Origin: Macrostomum lignano
Lineage: Eukaryota
Direction of reading: 5' to 3'
Assembly: GCA_002269645.1 (NCBI GenBank)
Contig: NIVC01002881.1
Coordinates: 68,295-132,294 of the forward strand
DNA: 64,000 nt
The first letter of the stretch is position 1; the number at the start of each line of letters is the position of its first letter. The position numbers and the translations under genes are program-made. The notes below the pieces were generated by a model that worked only from the letters and a program-made list of their open reading frames with translations, did not search any database and was not told the DNA's origin. Shown here in pieces: positions 7,051 through 63,255 of this stretch.

Positions 7051-7114
7051 AATGCCCCCCCACGATTCCACAGTGCCTCTCCTCCATCGCTCCTCCCGTC
7101 TCCCAACTCGGCAG

Positions 7115-7547: not shown

Positions 7548-9185
7548 TCTTGTCACTCCATCCTCACTCTCTTGTCACTCTATCCTCACACTCTTGTCAC
7601 TCCATCTTTACTCACTCCATCCTCACACTCTTGTCACTCCATCTTTACTCACTCCATCCTCACACTCTTGTCACTCCATCTTTACTCACTCCATCCTCAC
7701 ACTCTTGTCACTCCATCTTTAGTCACTCCATCCTCACACTCTTGTCACTCCATCTTTAGTCACTCCATCCTCACACTCTTGTCACTCCATCCGCAGTCAC
7801 TCCATCCTCACTCTCTTGTCGCTCCATCCTCACTCTCTTGTCACTCTATCCTCATTCTCTTGTCACACTCCATCCTCACTCTCTTGTCACTCCATCCTCA
7901 CTCTCTTGTCACTCTATCCTCATTCTCTTGTCACACTCCATCTTCACTCTCTTGTCACTCTATCCTCATTCTCTTGTCACACTCCATCCTCACTCTCTTG
8001 TCACTCTATCCTCACTCTCTTGTCACTCTATCCTCACACTCTTGTCACTCCCTCTTTAGTCACTCCATCCTCACACTCTTGTCACTCCATCCGCAGTCAC
8101 TCCATCCTCACACTCTTGTCACTCCATCCGCAGTCACTCTATCCTCACACTCTTGTCACTCCATCTTTACTCACTCCATCCTCACACTCTTGTCACTCCA
8201 TCTTTACTCACTCCATCCTCACACTCTTGTCACTCCATCTTTAGTCACTCCATCCTCACACTCTTGTCACTCCATCTTTAGTCACTCCATCCTCACACTC
8301 TTGTCACTCCATCCGCAGTCACTCCATCCTCACTCTCTTGTCACTCCATCCTCACTCTCTTGTCACTCCATCCTCACTCTCTTGTCACTCCATCCTCACT
8401 CTCTTGTCACTCTATCCTCACTCTCTTGTCACTCTATCCTCACTCTCTTGTCACTCTATCCTCACTCTCTTGTCACTCCATCCTCACTCTCTTGTCACTC
8501 CATCCTCACTCTCTTGTCACTCCATCCTCACTCTCTTGTCACTCCATCCTCACTCTCTTGTCACTCTATCCTCACTCTCTTGTCACTCTATCCTCACTCT
8601 CTTGTCACTCCATCCTCACACTCTTGTCACTCTATCCTCACACTCTTGTCACTCCATCTTCACTCTCTTGTCACTCCATCCTCACTCTCTTGTCACTCTA
8701 TCCTCACTCTCTTGTCACTCCATCCTCACTCTCTTGTCACTCCATCCTCACTCTCTTGTCACTCCATCCTCACTCTCTTGTCACTCTATCCTCACTCTCT
8801 TGTCACTCCATCTTCACTCTCTTGTCACTTTATCCTCACTCTCTTGTCACTCTATCCTCACTCTCTTGTCACTCCATCCTCACTCTCTTGTCACTCCATC
8901 CTCACTCTCTTGTCACTCTATCCTCACTCTCTTGTCACTCCATCTTCACTCTCTTGTCACTCTATCCTCACTCTCTTGTCACTCTATCCTCACTCTCTTG
9001 TCACTCCATCTTCACTCTCTTGTCACTCTATCCTCACTCTCTTGTCACTCTATCCTCACTCTCTTGTCACTCCATCCTCAGTCACTCCATCTTCACTCTC
9101 TTGTCACTCTATCCTCACTCTCTTGTCACTCTTTCCTCACTCGCTTGTCACTCCATCCTCAGTCACTCCATCTTCACTCTCTCGT
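7548..9185. repeat. 22-bp minisatellite
   Basis: Unit CTTGTCACTCCATCCTCACTCT with shorter variants. Confidence 0.97.
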
Positions 9186-9887: not shown

Positions 9888-11712
9888 TCTCTCCCCTGCC
9901 TCTCCCCTTCTCTCTTCTCTCTCTCTACCTCTCCCCTCTATTGTCTCTCTCTCCCTCTTTCCCCTCCCTACCTCTCCCCTCTCTCTCCCTCTCCCCTCTC
10001 TACCTCTCTCCTCTCTCTCCCTCTTTCCCCTCTCTCCCTCTTTCCCCTCTCTCCCTCTTTCCCCTCTCTACCTCTCTCCTCTCTCTCCCTCTTTCCCCTA
10101 TCTACCTCTCTCCTCTCTCTCCCTCTTTCCCCTCTCTACCTCTCTCCTCTCTCTCCCTCTTTCCCCTATCTACCTCTCTCCTCTCTCTCCCTCTTTCCCC
10201 TCTCTACCTCTCCCCTCTCTCCCTCTTCCCCCTATCTACCTCTCTCCTCTCTCTCCCTCTTTCCTCTATCTACCTCTCCCCTCTCTCCCTCTTTCCCCTC
10301 TCTACCTCTCTCCCCTCTCTACCTCTCTCCTCTCTCTCCCTCTTTCCCCTATCTACCTCTCCCCTCTCTCCCTCTTTCCCCTCTCTACCTCTCTCCCCTC
10401 TCTACCTCTCTCCTCTCTCTCCCTCTTTCCCCTATCTACCTCTCTCCTCTCTCTCCCTCTTTCCTCTATCTACCTCTCCTCTCTCTCCCTCTTTCCCCTC
10501 TCTCCCTCTTTCCCCTCTCTACCTCTCTCCTCTTTCTCCCTCTTTCCCCTATCTACCTCTCTCCTCTCTCTCCCTCTTTCCCCTCTCTACCTCTCCCCTC
10601 TCTCCCTCTTTCCCCTATCTACCTCTCTCCTCTCTCTCCCTCTTTCCCCTCTCTACCTCTCCCCTCTCTCCCTCTTTCCCCTCTCTCCCTCTTTCCCCTC
10701 TCTACCTCTCTCCTCTCTCTCCCTCTTTCCCCTCTCTCCCTCTTTCCCCTCTCTACCTCTCTCCTCTCTCTCCCTCTTTCCCCTATCTACCTCTCTCCTC
10801 TCTCTCCCTCTTTCCCCTCTCTACCTCTCTCCCCTCTCTACCTCTTTCCCCTCTCTACCTCTCTCCTCTCTCTCCCTCTTTCCCCTCTCTACCTCTCCCC
10901 TCTCTCCCTCTTTCCCCTATCTACCTCTCTCCTCTCTCTCCCTCTTTCCCCTATCTACCTCTCTCCTCTCTCTCCCTCTTTCCCCTCTCTACCTCTCCCC
11001 TCTCTCCCTCTTTCCCCTCTCTACCTCTCTCCCCTCTCTACCTCTCTCCTCTCTCTCCCTCTTTCCCCTATCTACCTCTCTCCTCTCTCTCCCTCTTTCC
11101 TCTATCTACCTCTCCTCTCTCTCCCTCTTTCCCCTCTCTCCCTCTTTCCCCTCTCTACCTCTCCCCTCTCTCTCCCTCTTTCCCCTATCTACCTCTCTCC
11201 TCTCTCTCCCTCTTTCCCCTCTCTACCTCTCCCCTCTCTCCCTCTTTCCCCTATCTACCTCTCTCCTCTCTCTCCCTCTTTCCCCTCTCTACCTCTCCCC
11301 TCTCTCCCTCTTTCCCCTCTCTACCTCTCCCCTCTCTCCCTCTTTCCCCTATCTACCTCTCTCCTCTCTCTCCCTCTTTCTCCTCTCTACCTCTCCCCTC
11401 TCTCCCTCTTTCCCCTCTCTCCCTCTTTCCCCTCTCTACCTCTCTCCTCTCTCTCCCTCTTTCCCCTCTCTCCCTCTTTCCCCTCTCTACCTCTCTCCTC
11501 TCTCTCCCTCTTTCCCCTATCTACCTCTCTCCTCTCTCTCCCTCTTTCCCCTCTCTACCTCTCCCCTCTCTCCCTCTTTCCCCTCTCTACCTCTCTCCCC
11601 TCTCTACCTCTTTCCCCTATCTACCTCTCTCTCCCTCTCCCTCTTTCCCCTCTCTACCTCTCCCCTCTCTCCCTCTTTCCCCTCTCTCCCTCTTTCCCCT
11701 CTCTACCTCTCA
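9888..11712. repeat. 1.8-kb polypyrimidine (CT-rich) compound repeat
   Basis: Modules CTCTCTCCCTCTTTCCC and CTCTACCTCT; essentially G-free on +. Confidence 0.97.
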
Positions 11713-14141: not shown

Positions 14142-15379
14142 CTGACACCACCCTGAAGACCCTGACACCACTCTGGAGACCCTGACACCACTCTGGAGAC
14201 CCTGACACCACTCTGGAGACCCTGACACCACTCTGGAGACCCTGACACCACTCTGGAGACCCTGACACCACTCTGGAGACCCTGACACCACTCTGGAGAC
14301 CCTGACACCACTCTGGAGACCCTGACACCACTCTGGAGACCCTGACACCACTCTGGAGACCCTGACACCACTCTGGAGACCCTGACACCACTCTGGAGAC
14401 CCTGACACCACTCTGGAGACCCTGGCACCACTCTGGAGACCCTGACACCACTCTGGAGACCCTGACACCACTCTGGAGACCCTGACACCACTCTGGAGAC
14501 CCTGACACCACTCTGGAGACCCTGACACCACTCTGGAGACCCTGACACCACTCTGGAGACCCTGACACCACTCTGGAGACCCTGACACCACTCTGGAGAC
14601 CCTGACACCACTCTGGAGACCCTGACACCACTCTGGAGACCCTGACACCACTCTGGAGACCCTGACACCACTCTGGAGACCCTGACACCACTCTGGAGAC
14701 CCTGGCACCACTCTGGAGACCCTGACACCACTCTGGAGACCCTGACACCACTCTGGAGACCCTGACACCACTCTGGAGACCCTGACACCACTCTGGAGAC
14801 CCTGACACCACTCTGGAGACCCTGACACCACTCTGGAGACCCTGACACCACTCTGGAGACCCTGACACCACTCTGGAGACCCTGACACCACTCTGGAGAC
14901 CCTGACACCACTCTGGAGACCCTGACACCACTCTGGAGACCCTGACACCACTCTGGAGACCCTGACACCACTCTGGAGACCCTGACACCACTCTGGAGAC
15001 CCTGACACCACTCTGGAGACCCTGACACCACTCTGGAGACCCTGACACCACTCTGGAGACCCTGACACCACTCTGGAGACCCTGACACCACTCTGGAGAC
15101 CCTGACACCACTCTGGAGACCCTGACACCACTCTGGAGACCCTGACACCACTCTGGAGACCCTGACACCACTCTGGAGACCCTGACACCACTCTGGAGAC
15201 CCTGACACCACTCTGGAGACCCTGACACCACTCTGGAGACCCTGACACCACTCTGGAGACCCTGACACCACTCTGGAGACCCTGACACCACTCTGGAGAC
15301 CCTGACACCACTCTGGAGACCCTGACACCACTCTGGAGACCCTGACACCACTCTAGAGACCCTGACACCACTCTAGAGA
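14142..15379. repeat. Near-perfect 20-bp minisatellite, about 61 copies
   Basis: Unit CCTGACACCACTCTGGAGAC. Confidence 0.99.
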
Positions 15380-15809
15380 CAAATCTCAGAAACGTACGCG
15401 CGCATTGCAAGGGTGCAGCTCGCATGTTCCTTTTTATTTATGTTTTTAACATTTAATAAAAAGCAAATTATTTATCTAAAACAAATATTAACATGTACCT
15501 TGTCACTTGGCTGCTCATATAACCGTTACTCACCTTGAATCTCTGTATAAGAATGTTTCAACAGAAATTGCAACTAATTAGACAGCATATTTATTCACCT
15601 TACTTGTTTAATTAACAGGTTTCTTCGAACAAAAAAATAATTAGTCAGAATTCTTTTGTCGAATGTAGGAGAGGGAATAGGGGGAATGAGAGGTCTCATG
15701 AATTTTATGGTGGGGGGACAAAGCCAATAACTTAAAATGTACATGTACATGACTAAATTTTAGCCCTCATTTTGGCACCGAAAGCACTCATTTTACGACG
15801 CGCCTGTGA

Positions 15810-24763: not shown

Positions 24764-27700
24764 CTATCCTTGGCCAATAATAATAATAATAATAACAAAA
24801 ATAATAGCAATACCTAATAGTGAAACTTCAATTGCATCTGTATTTTGTCTCGCACTAAACGTTCGTATAAATAACACATTCTCAACCGTCTTAATGTTGA
24901 CAAACAGACAGGCAGACAGAAAGACAGAAAAGCTAAATGTTAAAAAGATATAAATATTCACCAGTTTTATCTGAACACTGCAGTGTCCGGCCAGACTTGC
25001 ACTCGAAGTTCCGCTGCAGTTGCAGGGCTGATGTTGGCTTGCTTACCTGGTTACCTGCATCTCGTAAATGAATGTATCTTTCATTCTGTTTTGTAATTAA
25101 TGTTAGCCTTCGAAGTTGCAAAAGTTCTCTGCCTACTGCACCCCTGGATTCTTCAAACAGCGCAGCAAGCGCGTCTCTCGCTTCCTGCTTCCACCATGGG
25201 CCTCTCGTTATTTTGTTGTTGCGTCTCCAAAGTGCATGTGAGACATTTTTGAAAATGGATTCATTTATACGCATGAGTATGCCAATGTCTATATCTGTGC
25301 CATTATTACGCTGAAATTCTCCCAGCTTCTCTACCTCTCTGTCTGTCTCTGTCTCTCTCTGTCTCTCTCTCTATCCACTCTCTCCCTGCCTCTCACCTCC
25401 CCTCCCTCCCTGCCTCTCACCCTCCACTCTCTCCCTGCCTCTCACCCTCCACTCTCTCCCTGCCTCGCACCCTCCCCTCACTCCCTGCCTCTCACCCTCC
25501 ACTCCCTCCCTGCCTCTCACCCTACCCTCCCTCCCTGCCTCTCACCCTCCACTCCCTCCCTGCCTCTCACCCTACCCTCTTTCCCTGCCTCTCACCCTCC
25601 ACTCCCTCCCTGCCTCTCACCCTACCCTCTCTCCCTGCCTCTCACCCTCCACTCTCTCCCTGCCTCGCACCCTCCCCTCACTCCCTGCCTCTAACCATCC
25701 ACTCCCTCCCTGCCTCTCACCCTCCACTCCCTCCTTGCCTCTCACCCTCCCCTCTCTCCCTGCCTCTCACCCTCCACTCTCTCCCTGCCTCGCACCCTAC
25801 CCTCTCTCCCTGCCTCGCACCCTACCCTCTCTCCCTGCCTCTCACCCTCCACTCTCTCCCTGCCTCTCACCCTCCACTCTCTACCTGCCTCGCACCCTCC
25901 CTTCACTCCCTGCCTCTCACCCTCCACTCTCTCCCTGCCTCGCACCCTCCCCTCACTCCCTGCCTCTCACCCTCCACTCCCTCCCTGCCTCTCACCCTCC
26001 ACTCCCTCCCTGCCTCTCACCCTACCCTCTCTCCCTGCCTCTCACCCTCCACTCCCTCCCTGCCTCTCACCCTACCCTCTCTCCCTGCCTCTCACCCTCC
26101 ACTCTCTCCCTGCCTCGCACCCTCCCCTCACTCCCTGCCTCTAACCATCCACTCCCTCCCTGCCTCTAACCATCCACTCCCTCCCTGCCTCTCACCCTCC
26201 ACTCCCTCCCTGCCTCTCACCCTCCCCTCTCTCCCTGCCTCTCACCCTCCCCTCACTCCCTGCCTCTCACCCTACCCTCCCTCCCTGCCTCTCACCCTAC
26301 CCTCCCTCCCTGCCTCTCACCCTCCACTCCCTCCCTGCCTCTCACCCTACCCTCTCTCCCTGCCTCTCACCCTCCACTCCCTCCCTGCCTCTCACCCTAC
26401 CCTCTCTCCCTGCCTCTCACCCTCCACTCTCTCCCTGCCTCGCACCCTCCCCTCACTCCCTGCCTCTAACCATCCACTCCCTCCCTGCCTCTCACCCTCC
26501 ACTCCCTCCCTGCCTCTCACCCTCCCCTCTCTCCCTGCCTCTCACCCTCCACTCTCTCCCTGCCTCTCACCCTCCCCTCTCTCCCTGCCTCTCACCCTCC
26601 ACTCTCTCCCTGCCTCTCACCCTCCACTCTCTCCCTGCCTCTCACCCTCCCCTCTCTCCCTGCCTCTAACCATCCACTCCCTCCCTGCCTCTCACCCTAC
26701 CCTCTCTCCCTGCCTCTCACCCTCCACTCCCTCCCTGCCTCTCACCCTCCCCTCTCTCCCTGCCTCTAACCATCCACTCCCTCCCTGCCTCTCACCCTAC
26801 CCTCTCTCCCTGCCTCTCACGCTCCACTCTCTCCCTGCCTCTCACGCTCCACTCCCTCCCTGTCTCTCACCCTCCCCTCTCTCCCTGCCTCGCACCTTAC
26901 CCTCTCTCCCTGCATCTCAACCTTCTCTTTAATCCTAAAGAGGCAAAACGGTGTCAGCTGCCGCAGACACTGAAGCCAAGCAATTATTAAACCATTTTTT
27001 GCCAACTGAATCAAATATTAAAAGCCTCTTACAGATGGTATAGTTTCTATAAACAACTGACTCCCATCTGGGAACCCGACCAAACAAAAAGGCATTAAGT
27101 GTTTGTTAATCAAAGGCTTTGATGTTATCTTGATCGCCAAATTACTGGGTCAATAAAATACTTGTCAACTTTGAGTTCAACTCTGACGGAGTATAATTTA
27201 TGACCATATGAATCGAAGTCAATTCATAACTCTAAGGTTCTATTTATAGAGAAATCCTTGAACTAAGATTTATGCAGTTTACCTGTATGCTTTTATGAAT
27301 AGAAAAATTAATAAAATTGTAAATGGAGGGACTGGATAAAAATACAGGGATAGTCGAGAGGGATAGAGGGATAGAAGGATAGAAGGATAGAGTGATTGTG
27401 GAATAGAGGGATAGAGGGATAGAGGGATAGAGTGATAGAGGAATAGAGGGATAGAGTGATAGAGGGATAGAGGAATAGAGGGATAGAGGGATAGAGGGAT
27501 AGAGGGATAGAGGGATAGAGGGATAGAGTGATAGAGGGATAGAGGGATAGAGGGATAGAGGGATAGAGGGATAGAGGGATAGAGTGATAGAGGGATAGAG
27601 GGATAGAGGGATAGAGGGATAGAGAAGGATAAAGGAATTGGGATATAATAGACGGACATAGCGACACAGGACCGGGCAGACATTAGTCACAGGACAGAAC

Positions 27701-33340: not shown

Positions 33341-34069
33341 TAGGTGAGGCCAATATCTCTTGTATTTACTATTCTAAGTAAACAAACTGCCTCAAAACGC
33401 AACATTTTGTTCTCGGCAAGTGCTTACGGCTTAGTCACACATACATGTAATAAATAATAAATACCCGCATGTTATGATCCATTAATGCTTATATATTTGA
33501 CCTCGGGGTCAAAACAAAAAAGACAGGCCGCAATGGTTGACCCCCAAAACCTGATTGACTGTCCCAGCAGAAGCGAAGCCTCAATGTTGGCTACCAGTGG
33601 AATTCCTTGTTTAAATATTGTATATGAATTGTGTGTGTGCCGGTTGTATCACCTGCTGCGCTGCGACTCAGTTTAGTAAGGAGGGATGATAGGGGTTGGC
33701 TGAGACTCAGGACCAGGGGCAGACAAAGACAGTCAGTTGGTTCGCCCCCCCCCCACCTAACACGAACTCAACGTGCTACTCAGAAATGGAGTCCTCTGAG
33801 CCAACTCAAATGGCGGTCTCGGCTTGGATGTAGGAGCAAGCATTCTAGGTCGACCACCGACAAGGGGTTATGTAACTTCGGTTGAACAGTTTAGTGAGGT
33901 CGCTCAATGGATATTCTGTCACACCACCGTGCAAGCATGTAACTCTCATGTCTCATGGAGTCACTTCTGACACTTCTGCTAGCTTTTTGAGTTCAGTTAA
34001 AAATGCACGTTGAGTTTAAGCTTGAGGATCTGTTAGTGTAATAATTTCAGTTTTAGAGAGCCTTTTAAA

Positions 34070-35392
34070 CCTGATAGAGTGTCATTTTGACTCTGAGAGA
34101 GTGCCATTTTGAATCTGGGAGAGTGCCATTTTGACTCTGAAAGAGTGCCATTTTAAATCTGAGAGAGTACCATTTTGAATCCGAGAGAGTGCCATTTTGA
34201 ATCTGATAGACTGCCATTTTGAATCTGATAGACTGCCATTTTGAATCCGAGAGAGTGCCATTTTGAATCTGATAGACTGTCATTTTGACTCTGAGAGAGT
34301 GCCATTTTGAATTTGGGAGAGTGCCATTTTGACTCTGAGAGAGTGGCATTTTGAATTTGGGAGAGTGCCATTTTGACTCTGAGAGAGTGCCATTTTGAAT
34401 TTGGGAGAGTGCCATTTTGACTCTGAGAGAGTGCCATTTTAAATCTGATAGACTGCCATTTTGAATCCGAGAGAGTGCCATTTTGAATCTGATAGACTGC
34501 CATTTTGAATCTGATAGACTGCCATTTTGAATCCGAGAGAGTGCCATTTTGAATCTGATAGACTGCCATTTTGAATCCGAGAGAGTGCCATTTTGAATCT
34601 GATAGACTGCCATTTTGAATCTGATAGACTGCCATTTTGAATCCGAGAGACTGCCATTTTGAATCCGAGAGAGTGCCATTTTGAATCCGAGAGAGTGCCA
34701 TTTTGAATCTGATAGACTGTTATTTTGAATTTGAGAGAGTGCCATTTTGAATCTTGGAGAGTGCCATTTTGAATCTGAGAGAGTGCCATTTTGAGTCTGA
34801 GAGAGTGCCATTTTGAATCTGAGAGAGTGCCATTTTGAATCGGAGAGAGTGCCATTTTGAATCTGGGAGAGTGCCATTTTGAATCTGGGAGAGTGCCATT
34901 TTGAATCCGAGAGAGTGCCATTTTGAATCTGGGAGAGTGCCATTTTGAATCTGGGAGAGTGCCATTTTGAATCTGAGAGAGTGCCATTTTGAATCTGGGA
35001 GAGTGCCATTTTGAATCTGGGAGAGTGCCATTTTGAATCTGGGAGAGTGCCATTTTGAATCTGGGAGAGTGCCATTTTGAATCTGGGAGAGTGCCATTTT
35101 GAATCTGAGAGAGTGCCATTTTGAATCTGAGAGAGTGCCATTTCGACTCTGAGAGAGTGCCATTTTGAATCTGACAGAGTGCCATTTCAAACCTGATAGA
35201 GAGTGCCATATTAAACCTGATAGAGTGCCATATTAAACCTGATAGAGAGTGCTATATTAAACCTGATAGAGAGTGCTATATTAAACCTGATAGAGAGTGC
35301 CATTTTAAACCTGATAGAGAGTGCTATATTAAACCTGATAGAGAGTGCCATTTTAAACCTGATAGAGAGTGCCATTTTAAACCTGATAGAGA
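34070..35392. repeat. 22-bp minisatellite
   Basis: GAGAGTGCCATTTTGAATCTGG with zonal variants (TAGACT, GACT, AAACCT). Confidence 0.97.
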
Positions 35393-36508: not shown

Positions 36509-37239
36509 AAGTCTGTCAGTCAGTCAATCTATCTGTCTGTCTTGTATTCCTGTCCAGTCCAGTCCAGTCTCCTGTCTGACTAAGTACAACTTTTAAATGC
36601 AAATATAGAATAAAAAGGTCTAGAAATGCTACTAAAAGTAGTCTAGAGATTCGTCTTGCTAATGAGTCATTGCTAAGTAATCTGTAGTTGAACTATAGTG
36701 AATAATGATATTATAGTGCATGACTAAACAATTATTGGTATTAGAGGCAATTTCGAGTTAGCTTTAGTTGGCGTCAGATTGTTGTACATACTAGTAGTAC
36801 AAATTATTTGCCTTTAGGTAGAATATACGAAACAGCATGACTGCTTGGATACGCAATTAAGTTTACAATATTTAATTTATAAGTATGATTTCAATCCGAA
36901 GACTTCGAATAATTTCAAACTGATTCCAAGAAAACCTTTCTAATTTAAAAAAAGATCTTCTCCATATAGAAATTTAGTTACAATAACCAGTTCGATGTTT
37001 TGATTGAAAGAACCATGCAGTTAAAATAGGCCAGAATGCTTCCAAATAGAGTAACTGTTGTTTCGATTCTTGAGTAAACATGCACTTACATGCACTTTTT
37101 CCTGCGAGATAGTGCCGTACGGGGGCAAGGGTTCCACCGGCTTGAAAATCTGAGAACAACCCGCAACCAGAAAACTGCACTCCTCCAGGAATTAAATGAC
37201 AGAGGTATCGAGGGGATAAAATTTGCTTCCTCTTGTACA

Positions 37240-37908
37240 TGAGACAGGGACACCCACCAAGAGACAGGGACACCCACCAAGAGACAGGGACGCCCACCAA
37301 GAGACAGGGACGCCCACCAAAAAAAAGGGACGCCCACCAAAGGACAGGGACGCCCACCAAGAGACAGGGACGCCCACCAAAGGACATGGACACCCACCAA
37401 GAGACAGGGACGCCCACCAAAGGACATGGACACCCACCAAGAGACAGGGACGCCCAACAAGAGACAGGGACGCCCACCAAAGGACATGGACACCCACCAA
37501 GAGACAGGGACGCCCACCAAAGGACATGGACACCCACCAAGAGACAGGGACGCCCAACAAGAGACAGGGACGCCCACCAAGAGACAGGGACGCCCAACAA
37601 GAGACAGGGACACCCACCAAGAGACAGGGACGCCCACCAAGAGACAGGGACACCCACCAAGAGACAGGGACGCCCACCAAAGGACATGGACACCCACCAA
37701 GAGACAGGGACGCCCAACAAGAGACAGGGACACCCACCAAGAGACAGGGACGCCCACCAAGAGACAGGGACACCCACCAAGAGACAGGGACACCCACCAA
37801 GAGACAGGGACGCCCACCAAAGGACATGGACACCCACCAAGAGACAGGGACGCCCAACAAGAGACAGGGACGCCCAACAAGAGACAGGGACACCCACCAA
37901 GAGACAGG
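37240..37908. repeat. 20-bp minisatellite
   Basis: GAGACAGGGACGCCCACCAA interspersed with AGGACATGGACACCCACCAA. Confidence 0.97.
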
Positions 37909-38015: not shown

Positions 38016-38816
38016 TCAGGGTTCATAGGGCACAATATCCGACGCATTGCGCTGCCTCTCCTCGCGGCAGTTCACCAGCGCAGCCTTCAGACTGGCGAAG
38101 CTCGGCCTATCAGACGGGTCCCACTTCCAGCAGGCCAGCATGATGTCGTACAGAGAGTCGTCGCACTCAATCCCATTCAACTCGTCGTGTGGATTCCTCA
38201 TGCGATAGCCGTGCTGCACCATTTTAAGTATGTGCCTGTTTGTGTACAGTGAGTATGGTATGCCGCCTCTGGTGACGACCTCGTGGGCTAAGACACCGAA
38301 AGACCAAACGTCTGACTTGTTTGTCAGTTTGTATGCGAAAACTTCAGGGGCCGTCCAACGTATTGGAAATTTAGCATCTCTTGTTAGTTCGCACTCGTCC
38401 TCTTCTAAGAAACGGCTCAATCGAAAATTCCCTATCTTTACACTGTTCTCAAATCCCACGAAGATGTTGTAAGCGCGCAGATCAAAGTGAACGAGTCGTT
38501 TCTCTTCAAGATAGACCATGCCCTCAGCAATCTGCTGCAGCATATGGAGCATCGCTTCGTAGGTAACGAGTTTGCCATTCCTACTGTCATTTCGGAGGTA
38601 CCCTAGCAGGTTTTGACCATTCGACAGCAGCTCAGTAACGATGAAGGGCCTGGGAGCAGCGGTGCAGACACCGAGAAGCTGAACAATCTTGGAATGGTTC
38701 AGCGCTCGCATCACTTCGGCCTCTTGCACGACTGTCTGCTGCTTGTCGTCGCCTGATTCTTCGGGAAATATCACCAAAACTTGTACCACTGAGTTTCCGA
38801 AATTCGCTTTCCAGAA
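38016..38816 (-). CDS. Src/Frk-like tyrosine kinase-fold protein, exon 2 (kinase domain; predicted pseudokinase)
   Basis: Acceptor atgcag|TTC phase 0; QEAEVM, LLGVC, HFDLRAYN, KIGNFRLSR, KFPIRWTAPE, SDVWSFG, PSDRPSF; C-tail PYEP*. Confidence 0.92.
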   Translation of the reverse strand, partial: FWKANFGNSVVQVLVIFPEESGDDKQQTVVQEAEVMRALNHSKIVQLLGVCTAAPRPFIVTELLSNGQNLLGYLRNDSRNGKLVTYEAMLHMLQQIAEGMVYLEEKRLVHFDLRAYNIFVGFENSVKIGNFRLSRFLEEDECELTRDAKFPIRWTAPEVFAYKLTNKSDVWSFGVLAHEVVTRGGIPYSLYTNRHILKMVQHGYRMRNPHDELNGIECDDSLYDIMLACWKWDPSDRPSFASLKAALVNCREERQRNASDIVPYEP

Positions 38817-38966
38817 CTGCAAATGAGTTACATGTAAGACACATCAAGTAAATGATTATGCAAATTCTGATTGATTTAAGTCCAAAGGGGAAATTTTGAA
38901 ACCCATGATGGCCATGGTTATTGAAATGGGACGTGGAGAGGCAGAGAGCAAACGGTGATGACTTAC

Positions 38967-39392
38967 TTTGCCGCCAAAGCTTGGACTTATTTTCTCCATC
39001 AGTTTTACCTGACAAATACTAATCTCATAGTCGCTCCATTGGAGCGGCCGGACGTACTCCCTTGGACAAGGCGCTTTCAACTGGCAGCCGAGTTCAGTAG
39101 TAGTAGTATTCTCATAATGTTCGATCATAGCTTGCAGGCTGTCAAAGAGATCAAGACTAATGTAGAGCCCAAGACTGTCTGCCTGTTTCACCACATGATG
39201 CTGGACCAAGATTCGACTCTCATCGTTGCTTTTCGATCGAACACTCAAGGTGCACACGCTGTGTTCGTCGGCCAGTTCGCACGGACGAAGCAGGAACGTC
39301 CCGATTGGCAGGCCCGGCATCAGAAGTTTCCGCTCCGCCTCTTTGGCATCAATGTCGAACCATTGATTGCCCATTAGTTGCTCATTTTCCAT
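38967..39392 (-). CDS. Src/Frk-like protein, exon 1 (SH2 domain, linker, Gly-loop position)
   Basis: ATG 39392; QWF...EAERKLL...GTFLLR...TLSVR...FDSLQAMIEHY...LGCQLKAPC is an SH2 domain; donor AAA|gtaagt phase 0; 150-nt intron; 408 aa in total. Confidence 0.9.
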
Positions 39393-42129: not shown

Positions 42130-43308
42130 AGGAGAAATGAGAAATGAGAAAGGAGAGGGAGAGATGAGAAAGGAGAGGGAGAGATGAGAAAGGAGAGGGA
42201 GAGATGAGAAAGGAGAGGGAGACATGAGAAAGGAGAGGGAGAGATGAGAAAGGAGAGGGAGAGATGAGAAAGGAGAGGGAGACATGAGAAAGGAGAGGGA
42301 GAGATGAGAAAGGAGAGGGAGAGATGAGAAAGGAGAGGGAGAGATACGAAAGGAGAGGGAGAGATGAGAAAGGAGAGGGAGAGATGAGAAAGGAGAGGGA
42401 GAGATGAGAAAGGAGAGGGAGAGATGAGAAAGGAGAGGGAGAGATGAGAAAGGAGAGGGAGAGATGAGAAAGGAGAGGGAGAGATGAGAAAGGAGAGGGA
42501 GAGATGAGAAAGGAGAGGGAGAGATGAGAAAGGAGAGGGAGAGATGAGAAAGGAGAGGGAGAGATGAGAAAGGAGAGGGAGACATGAGAAAGGAGAGGGA
42601 GAGATGAGAAAGGAGAGGGAGAGATGAGAAAGGAGAGGGAGACATGAGAAAGGAGAGGGAGAGATGAGAAAGGAGAGGGAGAGATGAGAAAGGAGAGGGA
42701 GAGATACGAAAGGAGAGGGAGAGATGAGAAAGGAGAGGGAGAGATGAGAAAGGAGAGGGAGAGATGAGAAAGGAGAGGGAGAGATGAGAAAGGAGAGGGA
42801 GAGATGAGAAAGGAGAGGGAGAGATGAGAAAGGAGAGGGAGAGATGAGAAAGGAGAGGGAGAGATGAGAAAGGAGAGGGAGAGATGAGAAAGGAGAGGGA
42901 GAGACGAGAAAGGAGAGGGAGAGATGAGAAAGGAGAGGGAGAGATGAGAAAGGAGAGGGAGAGATGAGAAAGGAGAGGGAGAGACGAGAAAGGAGAGGGA
43001 GAGATGAGAAAGGAGAGGGAGAGATGAGAAAGGAGAGGGAGAGATGAGAAAGGAGAGGAGAGATGAGAAAGGAGAGGGAGAGATGAGAAAGGAGAGGGAG
43101 AGATGAGAAAGGAGAGGGAGAGATGAGAAAGGAGAGGGAGAGATGAGAAAGGAGAGGGAGAGATGAGAAAGGAGAGGGAGAGATGAGAAAGGAGAGGGAG
43201 AGATGAGAAAGGAGAGGGAGAGATGAGAAAGGAGAGGGAGAGATGAGAAAGGAGAGGGAGAGATGAGAAAGGAGAGGGAGAGATGAGAAAAGAGAGGGAG
43301 AGATGATA
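42130..43308. repeat. 20-bp purine-rich minisatellite, about 58 copies
   Basis: GAGATGAGAAAGGAGAGGGA. Confidence 0.98.
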
Positions 43309-43852
43309 AAGGACAATGGAGAACAGAGGCGAGAGGGGAAGACAAAGTGATGAAGGAAACAAGAAGCAAGAGGAAAAAAGCCAGTGAGGGGAAGAATTCC
43401 CGGCAATCCCAAGGCTTCTTATGTTGAATCACCCTCTCGCTCCGCTGCAATGCCTCCCGATATAAAAAAGGGTATAGTGTTTTTATAAAATCCCAGAAAA
43501 AAATTGTGCAGCTGGGGTTTTTTAGTCAGCCTGTTGTGCAACAACCTCGGTTTGGCAGCCTTCCTGCTGGGCTATACAGGGGTAGCTTGCATTGTGAGAG
43601 AAATCAGGAAAAAATCATCATCAAATTGGTCGTTCTGCGCTGTCCCGAGGGCGGAAGCGAACAGCACCGTGTTTGACTCTGACCCAACCCAACACTTAGT
43701 CACTCTTTAAGCTGCTGCTGGCAAATCTACCAGCTAAATGCTAAAGAGACGAGGATAGAACGAGTTTACGTTACCATGGGAGTCAGTCACACGGCTAAAA
43801 TGGTCTACCGGTGCAAGAAATCTGAATGGAGAAAACCAAACTCAAACGAATT

Positions 43853-49524: not shown

Positions 49525-50221
49525 CCCAGGCCACTCACCACAGCTGTCATGCTGCCGCAGTCAGCTGAAGAAGTCAGTATTGCAATATGATGAGCAGTTT
49601 AAAAGCAGTTCTCTTGAATTGTCTGCCCGAAGAAGTGGTGCCCGTCTTTCAAAAGCATGAAGGGGAGTCAAGAAGAGAGGCAAAATTCTCTAAGACACAG
49701 GCATCATGACGAGGTGTACCTCATTGCTTTCCTAAGTGAGCTGTAACCCATGGGTTTATAACAAAAAATGTACCCTACAATCTAGATAGCGCTGGACAAC
49801 AAACGCATTAGCTTGATAACAACTGCCGGCATAGACTAGAGCAGAAAGTACACAGACACACAATCTATATAGGAAAGAACAGCGCACACTGCACCCAAGT
49901 AACTTCAAATCCTCTCAACCGGGGAATCCTGACGAATAACTTTGGTAGCCAAAGTAGGAAATAGCGAATTTTCCGCTTCCTACGCCCTGTGCCACTGTCC
50001 CCTAAAAGCAGACAGTCAAGTCAGTAAGTTAGCGCGTACAGCTGATTTGCACTACAGCCTTGGATACTGCAAAACAGACCATTCTACAGGTTTATATTCA
50101 TAATTCGTAACGTGGCCTTGGGAAAATTTTTCAATATAATAGAAATTCTTGTGGAACTAAAACAAACTTTATTGACAGACATGCTCAGAATGCATAACTT
50201 CTTTCTTTCATAACGATTTAA

Positions 50222-51682
50222 TTCAGGGTGTTTAAGGGTTCAAAATGCAGGGTGTTTAGAGTCCAGAGTGCAGGGTGTTTAGAGTTCAGAATTCAGGGTG
50301 TTTAGAGTTCAGAATTCAGGGTGTTTAGAGTACAGAGTGCAGGGTGTTTAGAGTTCAGAATTCAAGGTGTTTAGAGTTCAGAATTCAGGGTGTTTAGAGT
50401 ACAGAGTGCAGGGTGTTTAGAGTTCAGAATTCAGGGTGTTTAGAGTACAGAATTCAGGGTGTTTAGAGTACAGAGTGCAGGGTGTTTAGAGTTCAGAATT
50501 CAAGGTGTTTAGAGTTCAGAATTCAGGGTGTTTAGAGTACAGAGTGCAGGGTGTTTAGAGTTCAGAATTCAGGGTGTTTAGAGTCCAGAGTGCAGGGTGT
50601 TTAGAGTCCAGAATTCAGGGTGTTTAGAGTTCAGAATTCAGAGTGTTTAGAGTACAGAGTGCAGGGTGTTTAGAGTTCAGAATTCAAGGTGTTTAGAGTT
50701 CAGAATTCAGGGTGTTTAGAGTACAGAGTGCAGGGTGTTTAGAGTTCAGAATTCAGGGTGTTTAGAGTCCAGAGTGCAGGGTGTTTAGAGTCCAGAATTC
50801 AGGGTGTTTAGAGTTCAGAATTCAGAGTGTTTAGAGTACAGAGTGCAGGGTGTTTAGAGTTCAGAATTCAAGGTGTTTAGAGTTCAGAATTCAGGGTGTT
50901 TAGAGTACAGAGTGCAGGGTGTTTAGAGTTCAGAATTCAAGGTGTTTAGAGTTCAGAATTCAGGGTGTTTAGAGTACAGAGTGCAGGGTGTTTAGAGTTC
51001 AGAATTCAGGGTGTTTAGAGTCCAGAGTGCAGGGTGTTTAGAGTCCAGAATTCAGGGTGTTTAGAGTTCAGAATTCAGAGTGTTTAGAGTACAGAGTGCA
51101 GGGTGTTTAGAGTTCAGAATTCAGGGTGTTTAGAGTACAGAGTGCAGGGTGTTTAGAGTTCAGAATTCAGGGTGTTTAGAGTCTAGAGTGCAGGGTGTTT
51201 AGAGTCCAGAATTCAGAGTGTTTAGAGTTCAGAATTCAGAGTGTTTAGAGTTTAGAATTCAGGGTGTTTAGAGTTCAGAATTCAGGGTGTTTAGAGTTCA
51301 GAATTCAGGGTGTTTAGAGTTCAGAATTCAGGGTGTTTAGAGTTCAGAATTCAGGGTGTTTAGAGTTCAGAATGCAGGGTGTTTAGAGTTCAGAATTCAG
51401 GGTGTTTAGAGTTTAGAATTCAGGGTGTTTAGAGTTCAGAATTCAGGGTGTTTAGAGTTCAGAATTCAGAGTGTTTAGAGTTCAGAATGCAGGGTGTTTA
51501 GAGTTCAGAATTCAGAGTGTTTAGAGTTCAGAATTCAGAGTGTTTAGAGTTCAGAATTCAGAGTGTTTAGAGTCCAGAATTCAGAGTGTTTAGAGTTCAG
51601 AATGCAGGTTGTTTAGAGTCCAGAATGCAGGGTGTTTAAGGGTTCAAAATGCAGGGTAGTTAGAGTTCAGGGTGTTTAGAAT
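50222..51682. repeat. 23-bp minisatellite with higher-order variant pattern
   Basis: CAGGGTGTTTAGAGTTCAGAATT and a ...GTACAGAGTG variant. Confidence 0.97.
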
Positions 51683-56575: not shown

Positions 56576-56707
56576 TCATTAACCCAGACAGAATTCCCCT
56601 CAAATGAACCTAAACAGTAAACACATAGGTCTCTCAAAAAGAAACTAAGGCACCCAGATAATTCCTCTCAGAAACTGATCCGCTGCTCAAAGCCTATTAA
56701 GACTCAC

Positions 56708-57265
56708 CTTGTCGCTCTTCTCGCACAGGAACTTGAGCTTCTGCTCCCGCCGGTGCATGAACACGCCATCCAATTGTCCAGTGTCCACAGCCCGAATCTC
56801 AATGGCTTTATTGCCCCAGCCCATAAACTGGCCAGTGCTGATATAAGCAACACTTGAAGGCGGCTCGGCCCAGTGCACCACAACGTCCTTGAGCCGGCGT
56901 CCATTGGTGTCGTAATACACACCTTCGTTATTGTACAGAAGCAACAGGTGCCGTCCCTGACTGTCCGGCAGGATTACAATAGCGTGAGGCTTAACATCTC
57001 CCGGATCAACTGAGCTCGGCACGAACACATCTAAATAGGCATTCGAATCCAGGTCGATAGCGTGAAATCCGCAGTTGGATCCGTACAGTACCTTCATCTT
57101 TGTATCGTTCTCGAATGTTAAATCAACCGTGATTGGCGTGTAGGGCAAACCCGTGAACGATTTGAAGGCCATGAACTGGTTGTTGGGCTTGGGCGCCCAG
57201 GCATACAGTTCGATGCTGTCCTTCAGGGCTATCACTAGGAATTTGATGCGCTCGTAACGGACAAC
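56708..57265 (-). CDS. MAP4K4: MAP4K4-family kinase, CNH-domain exon (intact frame)
   Basis: Acceptor ctcgcag|GTT, donor AAG|gtgagt, both phase 0; [16 protein letters not shown]...YAWAPKP...[10 protein letters not shown]...[20 protein letters not shown]. Confidence 0.93.
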
Positions 57266-57419
57266 CTGCGAGTTGAAATGGGGATTTGGGTGCAATATTA
57301 TGGGCTGCGTTCTGGCTGGATTCTTTTATTTGTCTGTCTGTCTGCTGTCCTGCGTTTGTGCCCATCTACTCTCAGTATCTGTTCATCTACTCTCAGTGTT
57401 TGTCCATCTATTTTCAGTG

Positions 57420-57720
57420 TCTGTCGGTCTCTGAGTCCTAGTGTCTGTCGGTCCCTAAGTCCTAGTGTCTGTCCCTGAGTCCTAGTGTCTGTCGGTCCCT
57501 GACCCTGAGTCTTAGTGTCTGTCGGTCCCTAAGTCCTAGTGTCTGTCGGTCCCTAAGTCCTAGTGTCTGTCGGTCCCTAAGTCCTAGTGTCTGTCCCTGA
57601 GTCCTAATGTCTGTCGGTCCCTGACCCTGAGTCTTAGTGTCTGTCGGTCCTAAGTCCTAGTGTCTGTCGGTCCCTAAGTCCTAGTGTCTGTCCCTGAGTC
57701 TTAGTGTTTATCCTTGAGTC
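57420..57720. repeat. ~24-bp minisatellite (MAP4K intron)
   Basis: GTCCCTAAGTCCTAGTGTCTGTCG. Confidence 0.92.
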
Positions 57721-57762
57721 TCAGTGCCTGTCCATCTCACAGCAACGCCAACATGAAGTCAC

Positions 57763-60251
<2,489 letters not shown>

Positions 60252-60289
60252 TCATTATTCTTCAGGTGTTTTTAGGGGTGATTATTTTT

Positions 60290-62735
60290 CATTTGTGGTT
60301 CAGGGCTATTCTTCATTTGTGGTTCAGGTGTGATTCTTCATTTGTGGTTCAGGGGTGATTCTTCATTTGTGGTTCAGAGGCGATTCTTCATTTGTGGTTC
60401 AGGGGTGATTCTTCATTTGTGGTTCAGGGGTGATTCTTCATTTGTGGTTAAGGGGTGATTCTTCATTTGTGGTTCAGGGGTGATTCTTCATTTGTGGTTC
60501 AGGGGTGATTCTTCATTTGTGGTTCAGGGGTGATTCTTCATTTGTGGTTCAGAGGCGATTCTTCATTTGTGGTTCAGGGTGATTCTTCATTTGTGGTTCA
60601 GGGGTGATTCTTCATTTGTGGTTAAGGGGTGATTCTTCATTTGTGTGTTCAGGGGTGATTCTTCATTTGTGGTTCAGGGGTGATTCTTCATTTGTGGTTC
60701 AGGGGTGATTCTCCATTTGTGGTTCAGGGGTGATTCTTCATTTGTGGTTCAGGGGTGATTCTTCATTTGTGGTTTAGGGGTGATTCTTCATTTGTGGTTC
60801 AGGGGTGATTCTTCATTTGTGGTTCAGAGGCGATTCTTCATTTGTGGTTCAGGGGTGATTCTTCATTTGTGGTTCAGGGTGATTCTTCATTTGTGGTTAA
60901 GGGGTGATTCTTCATTTGTGGTTCAGGGGTGATTCTTCATTTGTGGTTCAGGGGTGATTCTTCATTTGTGGTTCAGGGGTGATTCTTCATTTGTGGTTCA
61001 GGGTGATTCTTCATTTGTGGTTCAGAGGCGATTCTTCATTTGTGGTTCAGGGGTGATTCTTCATTTGTGGTTCAGGGGTGATTCTTCATTTGTGGTTAAG
61101 GGGTGATTCTTCATTTGTGGTTCAGGGGTGATTCTTCATTTGTGGTTCAGGGTGATTTTTCATTTGTGGATCAGGGGTGATTCTACATTTGTGGTTCAGG
61201 GGTGATTCTTCATTTGTGGTTCAGGGGTGATTCTTCATTTGTGGTTTAGGGGTGATTCTTCATTTGTGGTTCAGGGGTGATTCTTCATTTGCGGTTCAGG
61301 GGTGATTCTTCATTTGTGGTTCAGGGGTGATTCTTCATTTGTGGTTCAGGGGTGATTCTTCATTTGTGGTTTAGGGGTGATTCTTCATTTGTGGTTCAGG
61401 GGTGATTCTTCATTTGTGGTTCAGGGTGATTCTTCATTTGTGGTTCAGGGGTGATTCTTCATTTGTGGTTCAGAGGCGATTCTTCATTTGTGGTTCAGGG
61501 TGATTCTTCATTTGTGGTTCAGAGGCGATTCTTCATTTGTGGTTCAGGGTGATTCTTCATTTGTGGTTTAGGGGTGATTCTTCATTTGTGGTTCAGGGGT
61601 GATTCTCCATTTGTGGTTCAGGGGTGATTCTTCATTTGTGGTTCAGGGGTGATTCTTCATTTGTGGTTTAGGGGTGATTCTTCATTTGTGGTTCAGGGGT
61701 GATTCTTCATTTGTGGTTCAGGGGTGATTCTTCATTTGTGGTTCAGAGGCGATTCTTCATTTGTGGTTCAGGGGTGATTCTTCATTTGTGGTTCAGAGGC
61801 GATTCTTCATTTGTGGTTCAGGGGTGATTCTTCATTTGTGGTTCAGGGGTGATTCTTCATTTGTGGTTCAGGGGTGATTCTCCATTTGTGGTTCAGGGGT
61901 GATTCTTCATTTGTGGTTCAGGGGTGATTCTTCATTTGTGGTTTAGGGGTGATTCTTCATTTGTGGTTCAGGGGTGATTCTTCATTTGTGGTTCAGGGGT
62001 GATTCTTCATTTGTGGTTCAGGGGTGATTCTTCATTTGTGGTTCAGGGGTGATTCTTCATTTGTGGTTCAGGGGTGATTCTTCATTTGTGGTTTAGGGGT
62101 GATTCTTCATTTGTGGTTTAGGGGTGATTCTTCATTTGTGTTCAGGGTGATTCTTCATTTGTGGTTTAGGGGTGATTCTTCATTTGTGGTTTAGGGGTGA
62201 TTCTTCATTTGTGGTTCAGGGGTGATTCTTCATTTGTGGTTTAGGGGTGATTCTTCATTTGTGGTTAGGGGTGAATCTTAATTTGTGGCTCAGGGGTGAT
62301 TTTCATTTGTGGTTCAGAGGCGATTCTTCATTTGTGGTTCAGGGGTGATTCTTCATTTGTGGTTCAGGGGTGATTCTTCATTTGTGGTTTAGGGGTGATT
62401 CTTCATTTGTGTTTAGGGGTGATTCTTCACTTGTGGTTCAGGGGTGATTCTTCATTTGTGGTTTAGGGGTGATTCTTCATTTGTGGTTTAGGGGTGATTC
62501 TTCATTTGTGGTTCAGGGGTGATTCTTCATTTGTGGTTTAGGGGTGATTCTTCATTTGTGGTTAGGGTGAATCTTAATTTGTGGCTCAGGGGTGACTCTT
62601 CATATGTGGTTCGGGGCTGATTCTTCATTTGTGGTTCGGGGCTGATTCTTCATTGTGGTTCAGAGTCGATTCTTCATTTGTGGTTCAGAGTCGATTCTTC
62701 ATTTGTGGTTCGGGGCTGATTCTTCATATGTGGTT
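60290..62735. repeat. 25-bp minisatellite, about 98 copies, filling the first located MAP4K intron
   Basis: TTCTTCATTTGTGGTTCAGGGGTGA. Confidence 0.98.
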
Positions 62736-62752
62736 CAGAGACGTTTCACTCA

Positions 62753-63255
<503 letters not shown>

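What the first reader, a model, noticed from the sequence alone, without database searches (positions are those of the whole stretch)
38016..39392. SH2-containing Src/Frk-like pseudokinase that keeps its regulatory parts but lost catalysis
Seen: Gly loop is ISPSFGGKFW; the VAIK strand reads VVQVLVIF (no Lys); HRDLRAAN is HFDLRAYN; DFG is NFR; the activation-loop Tyr is absent (DECELTRD). The alphaC Glu (QEA), WTAPE, the SH2 phosphotyrosine-binding Arg (FLLR) and a C-terminal Tyr (PYEP, compare Src PQYQP) are retained. The ORF is intact with a clean intron, no SH3 and no myristoylation Gly. Established: the beta3 Lys and DFG Asp are needed for Mg-ATP catalysis, and Src-family kinases are normally active. 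Inference: a catalytically dead SH2-kinase scaffold or decoy, possibly still switched by Csk-type tail phosphorylation. I know of no described Src-family member like this.
Basis: partly seen in the sequence, partly recalled or inferred. Interest (0 to 1): 0.78.

Follow-up and report, generated by a model that had tools for sequence, protein, structure and literature searches.

The report
Flatworm Src-family SH2 pseudokinase gene
This is a two-exon gene of the flatworm Macrostomum lignano, a truncated duplicate of a Src-type tyrosine kinase that kept its SH2 domain and kinase fold but lost the residues needed to bind ATP and catalyse; it is a lineage-specific "dead kinase" of a familiar kind, mildly unusual only because it arose in the Src family.

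Summary
A 408-aa protein is encoded on the minus strand: exon 1 39392-38967, a 150-nt GT-AG intron, exon 2 38816-38016. It has an SH2 domain and a tyrosine-kinase domain.

Its closest relatives are active SH3-SH2-kinase paralogues of Macrostomum lignano (about 51% identity). They share the same single phase-0 intron in the Gly-loop, so this is a 5'-truncated DNA-level duplicate.

Of 80 positions at least 95% conserved in 113 Src-family proteins, three of the active paralogues keep all 80 and this protein loses 19. The losses cluster in the ATP and catalytic site, including bulkier residues at all three adenine-sandwiching positions, as in VRK3.

Four results argue for continued selection rather than decay: the intact ORF, in-frame indels only, losses restricted to the active site, and three synonymous to three nonsynonymous differences from a near-identical second copy.

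The "regulatory parts kept" claim is only partly right. SH3 and the myristoylation site are gone. The SH2 alphaA2 Arg is lost. The canonical tail Tyr is replaced, with a new Tyr 6 residues further on.

Expression could not be tested. This is a new member of a known kind, of moderate to low interest.

The parts
38967..39392 (-). Exon 1 (142 codons): start ATG at 39392-39390, SH2 domain, SH2-kinase linker and the first half of the degenerate Gly-loop (ISPSFGGK).
   Evidence: An in-frame TAA lies 4 codons upstream. The donor is GTAAGT.
38817..38966 (-). Intron, 150 nt, GT-AG, phase 0. It sits at the same codon boundary (after GSFGE / SFGGK) as the single intron of the four active M. lignano paralogues.
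38016..38816 (-). Exon 2 (266 codons plus TGA): the rest of the kinase domain and the C-terminal tail.
39114..39353 (-). SH2 domain (aa 14-93). The FLLR Arg36 (39285-39296) and the betaD4 His65 are kept. The alphaA2 Arg is Ala16.
   Evidence: Pfam PF00017, 33 bits; per-site table.
38079..39011 (-). Tyrosine-kinase-fold domain (aa about 128-388, interrupted by the intron).
   Evidence: Pfam PF07714, E=3e-64. Best PDB sequence match c-Src, E=5e-66. AF2 model mean pLDDT 89.5.
38766..38780 (-). Beta3 strand VLVIF (aa 155-159) in place of xVAVK. It has no catalytic Lys, and the adenine-contacting Ala is Val.
   Evidence: K 113/113 and A 111/113 in the family.
38466..38489 (-). Catalytic loop HFDLRAYN (aa 252-259). 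The HRD Arg is Phe; the catalytic Asp254 and Asn259 are kept. The next-but-one residue, Leu (113/113), is Phe261.
38421..38429 (-). NFR (aa 272-274) in place of DFG.
   Evidence: D and G 113/113.
38376..38399 (-). Activation-loop segment DECELTRD (aa 282-289). The autophosphorylation Tyr (97/113) is Cys284.
38016..38048 (-). C-terminal tail ...QRNASDIVPYEP plus stop. The canonical tail-Tyr position is Ala400. Tyr406 (38025-38027) lies 6 residues further on.

Best explanation
This is a Macrostomum-specific paralogue of the Src family. It arose by DNA-level duplication of an SH3-SH2-kinase gene and lost the 5' part of exon 1, which encodes the myristoylation site, unique region and SH3. It then evolved into an SH2-pseudokinase.

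Shown:
- The domain architecture.
- The intron shared with the active paralogues.
- Loss of the beta3 Lys, two Gly-loop glycines, the HRD Arg, the DFG Asp and Gly, and the activation-loop Tyr.
- Bulkier residues at the three catalytic-spine positions that sandwich adenine (V->F, A->V, L->F).
- Retention of the rest of the fold.

Inferred:
- The protein does not bind ATP. Its purine pocket is filled by side chains, as in VRK3 and in engineered C-spine mutants, so the kinase fold is a stable, nucleotide-independent module.
- It acts without catalysis as a soluble adaptor or competitor in Src-type phosphotyrosine signalling. It would use its SH2 domain (probably weakened) and the conserved C-lobe and substrate-binding surfaces (FPIRWTAPE, DVWSFG and the alphaH-alphaI core). 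It would titrate ligands, substrates or regulators away from the membrane-anchored active paralogues.
- The gene is, or was until very recently, kept by purifying selection.
For: Origin:
- Best hits are M. lignano Src-family proteins at 47-51% identity; every protein from another species listed in the table is at most 42%.
- An NJ tree places it inside the Macrostomum clade.
- Its single phase-0 intron is at the same codon boundary as in P0001, P0002, P0004 and P0009.
- No SH3 remnant exists in the window.

Loss of catalysis:
- 19 of 80 family-invariant positions are lost, against 0/80 in P0001, P0002 and P0004.
- In the kinase domain, 12/24 invariant positions in the ATP/catalytic segments changed, against 6/47 elsewhere (Fisher p=0.0012).
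- V143F, A157V and L261F are the C-spine residues around adenine, and G136S and G138S lie in the Gly-loop. This is the pattern described for VRK3, which binds no nucleotide (PMC4718504). Engineered Val/Ala->Phe C-spine mutants are dead but stable (PMC12721161).

Selection:
- The dN branch is 0.289, against 0.097-0.157 for the active paralogues (three-point estimate).
- If that excess of about 0.16 substitutions per site had accumulated neutrally, P(no stop codon) is about 0.001.
- At least four lineage-specific indels are all multiples of 3 nt.
- Splice sites are intact.
- Against the near-identical second copy behind A0A1I8FII3, visible differences are 3 synonymous to 3 nonsynonymous, where about 1:8 is expected under neutrality (binomial p about 0.02; 0.06 counting only the four found by the script).

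Fold: the AF2 model is confident (mean pLDDT 89.5, pTM 0.83) and superposes best on assembled Src and Fgr structures (TM 0.75-0.78).
Against: - No expression evidence could be obtained.
- The gene has no counterpart among the transcript-based NCBI proteins of M. lignano. That annotation excluded transcripts overlapping repeats (PMC5730564), and this gene is hemmed in by minisatellites.
- The 5' truncation leaves the promoter or trans-splice site unknown.
- dS against all paralogues is saturated, so no proper branch dN/dS exists.
- The test on the recent copy rests on six substitutions read from a gene model of an error-prone assembly.
- A neutral phase of up to about 0.02-0.05 substitutions per site cannot be excluded (P of no stop 0.39-0.10).
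- The AF2 model was driven by an alignment of active kinases, so it is not independent evidence.
- The non-catalytic role itself is pure inference.
Confidence: 0.6

Rival explanations
1. It is an unexpressed or recently dead duplicate, that is, an unprocessed pseudogene whose ORF happens still to be open. On this reading the 5'-truncated copy landed in a minisatellite-rich region without a promoter and is drifting. The active-site losses simply mark relaxed constraint.
For: - The 5' truncation removed the original start, and presumably the promoter.
- The gene is a 1.4-kb island between tandem arrays.
- It has no model in the transcript-based NCBI annotation.
- The two UniProt models of it from ML2 are frame-shifted patchworks.
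- Its amino-acid branch is 2-3 times longer than those of its paralogues.
- A short neutral phase is compatible with an open ORF.
Against: - The ORF, both splice sites and all lineage-specific indels are in frame, despite about 0.16 excess nonsynonymous substitutions per site (P about 0.001 if these were neutral).
- Invariant positions outside the active site are kept 41/47.
- Half of the visible differences from the second copy are synonymous.
- The frameshifts in the ML2 models are plausibly assembly errors. ML2 has 32% error-free bases by REAPR and fewer intact ORFs than Mlig_3_7 (PMC5730564).
- The NCBI annotation dropped transcripts overlapping repeats.
Confidence: 0.22
2. This is the first reader's specific version: a decoy still switched like Src, with Csk phosphorylating the C-terminal Tyr and the SH2 domain clamping onto it.
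For: - A Tyr lies 3 residues from the C-terminus (PYEP). The paralogues end ...QYE...QYEH or ...QYSQND.
- The FLxR Arg and the betaD4 His are kept.
- AF2 places the SH2 domain against the C-lobe, as in closed Src.
Against: - The conserved tail-Tyr column (Y 110/113) is Ala. The Tyr is 23 rather than 17 residues after RP(S/T)FA.
- The acidic-aromatic motif before the tail reads V-N-C here; 103/113 family members have E or D at the first position and 110/113 have F, Y, W or L at the third. From my own recollection, not checked here, that stretch of Src contributes to Csk docking.
- The SH2 alphaA2 Arg is lost.
- The SH3 domain, which is half of the Src clamp, is absent.
- One Tyr among the last six residues is expected by chance in roughly one protein in six.
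- The AF2 pose is likely inherited from training on Src structures.
Confidence: 0.1
3. It is an atypical but still active kinase, using a non-canonical arrangement as WNK and CASK do.
For: - The catalytic Asp254, Asn259, the alphaC Glu174 and the substrate-binding P+1 loop are retained.
- A Lys follows the last Gly-loop glycine (K142).
- Some proteins first called pseudokinases turned out to be active (CASK; PMC4718504).
Against: - Lys at position 142 also occurs in 3 normal family members, so it is not a compensating change.
- The beta3 Lys, DFG Asp, DFG Gly and two Gly-loop glycines are all lost together.
- All three adenine-sandwiching residues are enlarged.
Confidence: 0.06

Closest known systems
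Active Src-family paralogues of Macrostomum lignano (PAA87856.1 / BOX15_Mlig022589g1 = P0001; also P0002, P0004, P0009)
   Same: They have 43-51% identity over SH2 plus kinase. The single phase-0 intron is at the same place in the Gly-loop. They share clade-typical motifs (FLLRPC in SH2, KIVQLLGVCT, FPIRWTAPE, VTRGxxPY), and their tail ends shortly after a Tyr.
   Different: The paralogues have Gly2, a unique region, SH3 and all catalytic residues; P0001, P0002 and P0004 keep 80/80 family-invariant positions and P0009 keeps 76/81. The candidate lacks the N-terminal 120-150 residues and 19 invariant positions.
VRK3 (vertebrate pseudokinase paralogue of VRK1/2)
   Same: It is a pseudokinase born from an active family. 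Its Gly-loop glycines are replaced by side-chain-bearing residues and its purine pocket is filled by larger hydrophobic residues that complete the C-spine without nucleotide. The active site is poorly conserved while the fold is conserved (PMC4718504). The candidate shows the same substitution pattern at the homologous positions.
   Different: VRK3 belongs to a different kinase group (CK1/VRK, Ser/Thr) and has no SH2 domain. It keeps the beta3 Lys-alphaC Glu pair. Occlusion in the candidate is inferred from sequence only.
JAK JH2 and other tyrosine-kinase-group pseudokinases (HER3, EphB6/A10, PTK7, ROR, RYK)
   Same: They are tyrosine-kinase-fold domains without normal catalysis that signal by scaffolding or allostery. 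JAKs also combine an SH2-like domain with a pseudokinase domain.
   Different: None of these derives from the Src family. JH2 sits in cis with an active JH1 and binds ATP, and the others are receptors. Searches of the held literature found no description of a Src-family pseudokinase. The main survey, Kwon et al. 2019, was not available.
SLAP/SLA adaptors (Src-like adaptor proteins; recalled from general knowledge, not tested here)
   Same: They are Src-family-derived proteins that have no catalysis and act as negative adaptors through Src-type modular domains.
   Different: SLAP keeps SH3 plus SH2 and the myristoylation site and has lost the kinase domain altogether. The candidate is the converse: SH3 and the anchor are lost, and a dead kinase domain is kept.

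Membership tests
Src-family kinases (SFK) | Kinase domain and SH2 domain most similar to, and phylogenetically nested within, Src-family sequences | tested here: met
   c-Src is the best PDB sequence match, E=5e-66, against Abl 1e-55. The top 120 database hits include the named Src-family proteins. In the NJ tree it falls inside a Macrostomum Src clade (bootstrap 0.6; 0.8 when a cestode sequence is included). The intron is shared.
Src-family kinases (SFK) | N-terminal Gly2 myristoylation site and SH3 domain | tested here: not met
   The protein starts MENEQ, with an in-frame stop 4 codons upstream. tblastn finds no SH3 in the 64 kb even at E<=50.
Src-family kinases (SFK) | Catalytic residues: beta3 Lys, HRD Asp, DFG Asp | tested here: not met
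   The beta3 Lys is absent and DFG reads NFR. Only the HRD Asp is kept, as HFD.
Src-family kinases (SFK) | Activation-loop Tyr (Src Y416) and C-terminal inhibitory Tyr (Src Y527) at conserved positions | tested here: not met
   The Y416 column is Cys284. The Y527 column (Y 110/113) is Ala400. A non-homologous Tyr406 lies 6 residues downstream.
Pseudokinase (sequence definition: lacks at least one of the VAIK Lys, HRD Asp, DFG Asp) | Kinase fold with at least one of the three residues missing | tested here: met
   Pfam PF07714, E=3e-64. Lys and the DFG Asp are missing. The AF2 fold is confident.
Pseudokinase (functional definition) | No phosphotransfer activity, with or without nucleotide binding | not testable with these tools
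   This needs purified protein, a thermal shift with ATP/Mg, and a kinase assay. The sequence pattern (C-spine V->F, A->V, L->F) predicts no nucleotide binding.
Pseudogene (non-functional gene copy) | Disabling lesions (stop codons, frameshifts, broken splice sites) | tested here: not met
   The ORF of 408 codons is intact, the intron is GT-AG, and all indels relative to the paralogues are in frame.
Pseudogene (non-functional gene copy) | Neutral evolution (dN/dS about 1) and no expression | tested here: inconclusive
   dS is saturated against the paralogues. Indirect tests argue against long neutrality. Expression could not be tested. The gene is absent from the NCBI transcript-based annotation, but that annotation filtered repeat-overlapping transcripts.
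Processed retrocopy | Loss of the parental introns | tested here: not met
   The parental intron is retained at the same position and phase.

The most novel reading that the evidence does not exclude
This would be the first natural pseudokinase of the Src family. It would be a soluble SH2-pseudokinase whose adenine pocket is filled by its own side chains, a natural counterpart of engineered C-spine mutants. Selection would keep it in Macrostomum as a non-catalytic, dominant-negative or allosteric regulator of the expanded set of active Src paralogues.
Probability: 0.35. Interest if true: 0.5.

Novelty: new member of a known kind. Interest (0 to 1): 0.35.

Why it matters
About a tenth of kinases in any kinome are pseudokinases, and new ones arise often after duplication, so the kind is familiar. 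What is slightly unusual is the parent family. I found no description of a Src-family-derived pseudokinase in the held literature. The substitution pattern also looks like a natural version of the "fill the adenine pocket" mutants used to separate scaffold from catalytic functions.

If it is expressed, M. lignano offers a direct test of what the non-catalytic part of a Src-type kinase can do in vivo. The animal is transparent, amenable to RNAi and transgenesis, and regenerates.

If it is not expressed, it is only one more decaying duplicate in a highly duplicated, repeat-rich genome.

Tried and rejected
P0003 has no contig on record. The DNA of the second copy could therefore not be fetched, and dN/dS had to be inferred from its multi-frame protein model.
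- Pairwise dN/dS against the paralogues gave dS of 1.9-3 or undefined, which is saturated. Only dN branch lengths were used. An earlier run with the ML and YN00 methods timed out.
- A second homology search with the N-terminal 187 aa, looking for transcript fragments, found only the two UniProt models. I do not read this as lack of expression. The active paralogues also have no Logan-derived members, so M. lignano runs seem to be absent from that part of the database.
- The third homology search used the neighbour's CNH exon, to learn whether the window's own annotation is in the database. It returned no Macrostomum protein at all, so it was uninformative for that purpose and only confirmed the neighbour's identity.
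- WNK-like rescue by Lys142 was rejected, because Lys occurs there in 3 normal family members.
- A missed upstream SH3 exon was rejected.
- A retrocopy origin was rejected because the intron is kept.
- Literature searches for a described Src-family pseudokinase, or for a M. lignano kinome, found nothing relevant. Kwon et al. 2019 is not held.
- The AF2 and Foldseek results are reported, but I give them little weight because the alignment and the training data are dominated by active Src kinases.

Full report
**What is there.** On the minus strand, an ORF of 142 codons (39392-38967) ends at a GTAAGT donor. A 150-nt intron ends in TTTGCAG. A second ORF of 266 codons (38816-38016) follows in phase 0 and ends in TGA. 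The 408-aa product has a weak but significant SH2 domain (residues 14-93, 33 bits) and a strong tyrosine-kinase domain (residues 147-388, E=3e-64). By sequence its best solved relative is c-Src (E=5e-66), ahead of Abl (1e-55). An in-frame TAA lies four codons upstream of the ATG. No SH3-like sequence exists anywhere in the 64 kb, even at tblastn E<=50.

I aligned the protein to Src and to 113 Src-family proteins.
- The Gly-loop GxGxFG reads SPSFGG.
- Beta3 reads VLVIF, with no Lys (K is 113/113 in the family).
- HRDLRAAN reads HFDLRAYN (R 113/113). The catalytic Asp and Asn are kept.
- DFG reads NFR (D and G 113/113).
- The activation-loop Tyr is Cys.
- The alphaC Glu, the P+1 loop FPIRWTAPE, DVWSFG, CW..RP.F and the SH2 FLxR Arg are kept.

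Two points were missed. The alphaA2 Arg of the SH2 domain (R in 110/113) is Ala. The conserved tail Tyr column (Y in 110/113) is also Ala. The Tyr in PYEP lies six residues further on, 23 rather than 17 residues after RP(S/T)FA. The acidic-aromatic motif that precedes the tail reads V-N-C here; 103/113 family members have E or D at the first position and 110/113 have F, Y, W or L at the third.

**Organism and origin.** The best database hits are Macrostomum lignano proteins. Four are complete SH3-SH2-kinase Src-family members at 44-51% identity (P0001 = PAA87856.1, P0002, P0004, P0009). Two are short UniProt entries from the older ML2 assembly (A0A1I8FII3 = P0003, A0A1I8JQ21 = P0121). These two are patchwork, frame-switching models of this same gene or of a near-identical copy. 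They carry NFR, DECELTRD, HFDLRAYNIF and VVQVLVIF, so the substitutions are not an artefact of one assembly.

I fetched the loci of the four active paralogues. Each has exactly one intron, phase 0, between GSFGE and V. That is the same codon boundary as SFGGK|F in the candidate. In those genes the SH3 domain is encoded in the same first exon as the SH2 domain. The candidate is therefore a DNA-level duplicate, not a retrocopy, that lost the 5' part of exon 1. An NJ tree puts it inside the Macrostomum clade, with a root-to-tip length of 1.18 against 0.81-0.96 for its paralogues.

**Is it a gene or a wreck?** dS against every paralogue is saturated (1.9-3 or undefined), so a proper branch dN/dS is impossible. 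Four indirect tests all point the same way.
1. The candidate's dN branch is 0.289, against 0.097 for P0001 and 0.157 for P0004 (three-point estimate). If the excess of about 0.16 per site had accumulated neutrally, simulation gives a probability of about 0.001 that no stop codon would have arisen. For a neutral phase of 0.02-0.05 per site the probability is 0.39-0.10, so a recent death cannot be excluded.
2. At least four candidate-specific indels are all multiples of three.
3. Losses are not spread evenly. Of kinase-domain positions at least 95% conserved in the family, 12/24 in the ATP and catalytic segments changed, against 6/47 elsewhere (Fisher p=0.0012). Three of the active paralogues keep 80/80.
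4. I mapped A0A1I8FII3 onto the three reading frames of the locus. This shows six base substitutions relative to the window. Three are synonymous in the true frame (39306 CCA>CCG, 38577 AAT>AAC, 38109 GAT>GAC). Three are nonsynonymous (W97L, H270Y, K>N). Only about 11% of visible changes are expected to be synonymous under neutrality (binomial p about 0.02; 0.06 for the four found automatically).

The many frame switches in the ML2 models are plausibly assembly errors. ML2 has 32% error-free bases by REAPR and fewer intact ORFs than Mlig_3_7 (PMC5730564).

**What I could not get.** I found no expression evidence. The gene has no counterpart in the transcript-based NCBI annotation. That annotation discarded transcripts overlapping repeats. 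This gene is a 1.4-kb island between a 20-nt minisatellite starting 108 nt after the stop codon and a (CTGT)n array about 425 nt upstream of the start. The Logan part of the protein database seems not to include M. lignano, since the active paralogues have no Logan members. Its silence is therefore uninformative.

**How it probably works.** Catalysis is very unlikely. The beta3 Lys, the DFG Asp and Gly, and two Gly-loop glycines are lost together. The HRD Arg and the activation-loop Tyr, which normally pair after autophosphorylation, are both gone.

More telling, all three catalytic-spine residues that sandwich the adenine ring have become bulkier: Src V281/A293/L393 correspond to F143/V157/F261 here. 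The hinge Met is Leu, and the Gly-loop glycines now carry side chains. This is the pattern described for VRK3, whose purine pocket is filled by hydrophobic side chains so that the C-spine is complete without nucleotide (PMC4718504). It is also the logic of engineered Val/Ala->Phe C-spine mutants, which are dead but structurally stable (PMC12721161).

From this I infer a nucleotide-free, stably folded pseudokinase attached to an SH2 domain. It would be soluble, having no lipid anchor, and would act as an adaptor or competitor in Src-type signalling.

AF2 gives a confident model (pLDDT 89.5, pTM 0.83) that superposes best on assembled Src and Fgr structures (TM 0.75-0.78). I give this little weight, because the alignment and the training data are dominated by active Src kinases.

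**Comparison and novelty.** By descent it belongs to the Src family. By the family's functional hallmarks (anchor, SH3, catalytic residues, Y416, Y527) it fails. By the sequence definition it is a pseudokinase. It is not a retrocopy and shows no disabling lesion.

Pseudokinase paralogues are common, at about 10% of kinomes (PMC4718504). I found no described example derived from the Src family in the held literature. The main survey was unavailable.

I rate it a new member of a known kind, interest 0.35. It is worth a look by anyone working on M. lignano signalling, mainly if RNA-seq shows it is expressed.

Noticed in passing
window 56687-63240, minus strand: This is a MAP4K / TNIK / misshapen (mig-15)-type gene. 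It has STE20 kinase-domain exons ([37 protein letters not shown]), a poly-Gln-rich middle part (about 58000-59804) and a C-terminal CNH domain (57295-56687; Pfam E=1e-31; 60-66% identical to the CNH domain of TNIK/MINK/mig-15).
   Followed up: partly
window 60284-62738: A 2.45-kb minisatellite (25-nt unit, about 99 copies, 94% matches) lies inside the intron that splits the kinase domain of the MAP4K gene.
   Followed up: no
whole window (e.g. 3877-4743, 6221-7077, 7548-9161, 9947-11710, 14142-15380, 25374-26923, 34055-35391, 37241-37908, 42139-43313, 50220-51670): The density of minisatellite arrays with 15-60-nt units is extraordinary (65 TRF rows with score >=200). Many are open in several reading frames and produce long spurious ORFs. 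This fits the reported 15% simple and tandem repeat content of the M. lignano genome.
   Followed up: partly
window 37106-37174, minus strand: UniProt model A0A1I8JQ21 joins ...HFDLRAYNIF (ending at 38460) to a short ORF piece here, beyond the 20-nt minisatellite. It could be an alternative 3' exon or a gene-prediction artefact; this was not resolved.
   Followed up: no
L002 3001-4717 and 7457-7717; L004 and L005 (contig NIVC01000815.1, 95-103 kb and 125-133 kb): The active Src-family paralogues of M. lignano lie in tandem or near-tandem clusters: P0002 sits next to a P0001-like gene, and P0004 lies about 22 kb from P0009. The pseudokinase has no Src-family neighbour within this window.
   Followed up: partly
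hits P0096, P0116 (Echinococcus 'Blk') and several ENA or Logan proteins: Several flatworm and other Src-family hits have SH2 plus kinase but no SH3 by Pfam, yet keep all catalytic residues. An SH3-less architecture is therefore not unique to the candidate. Some of these may be partial models.
   Followed up: no
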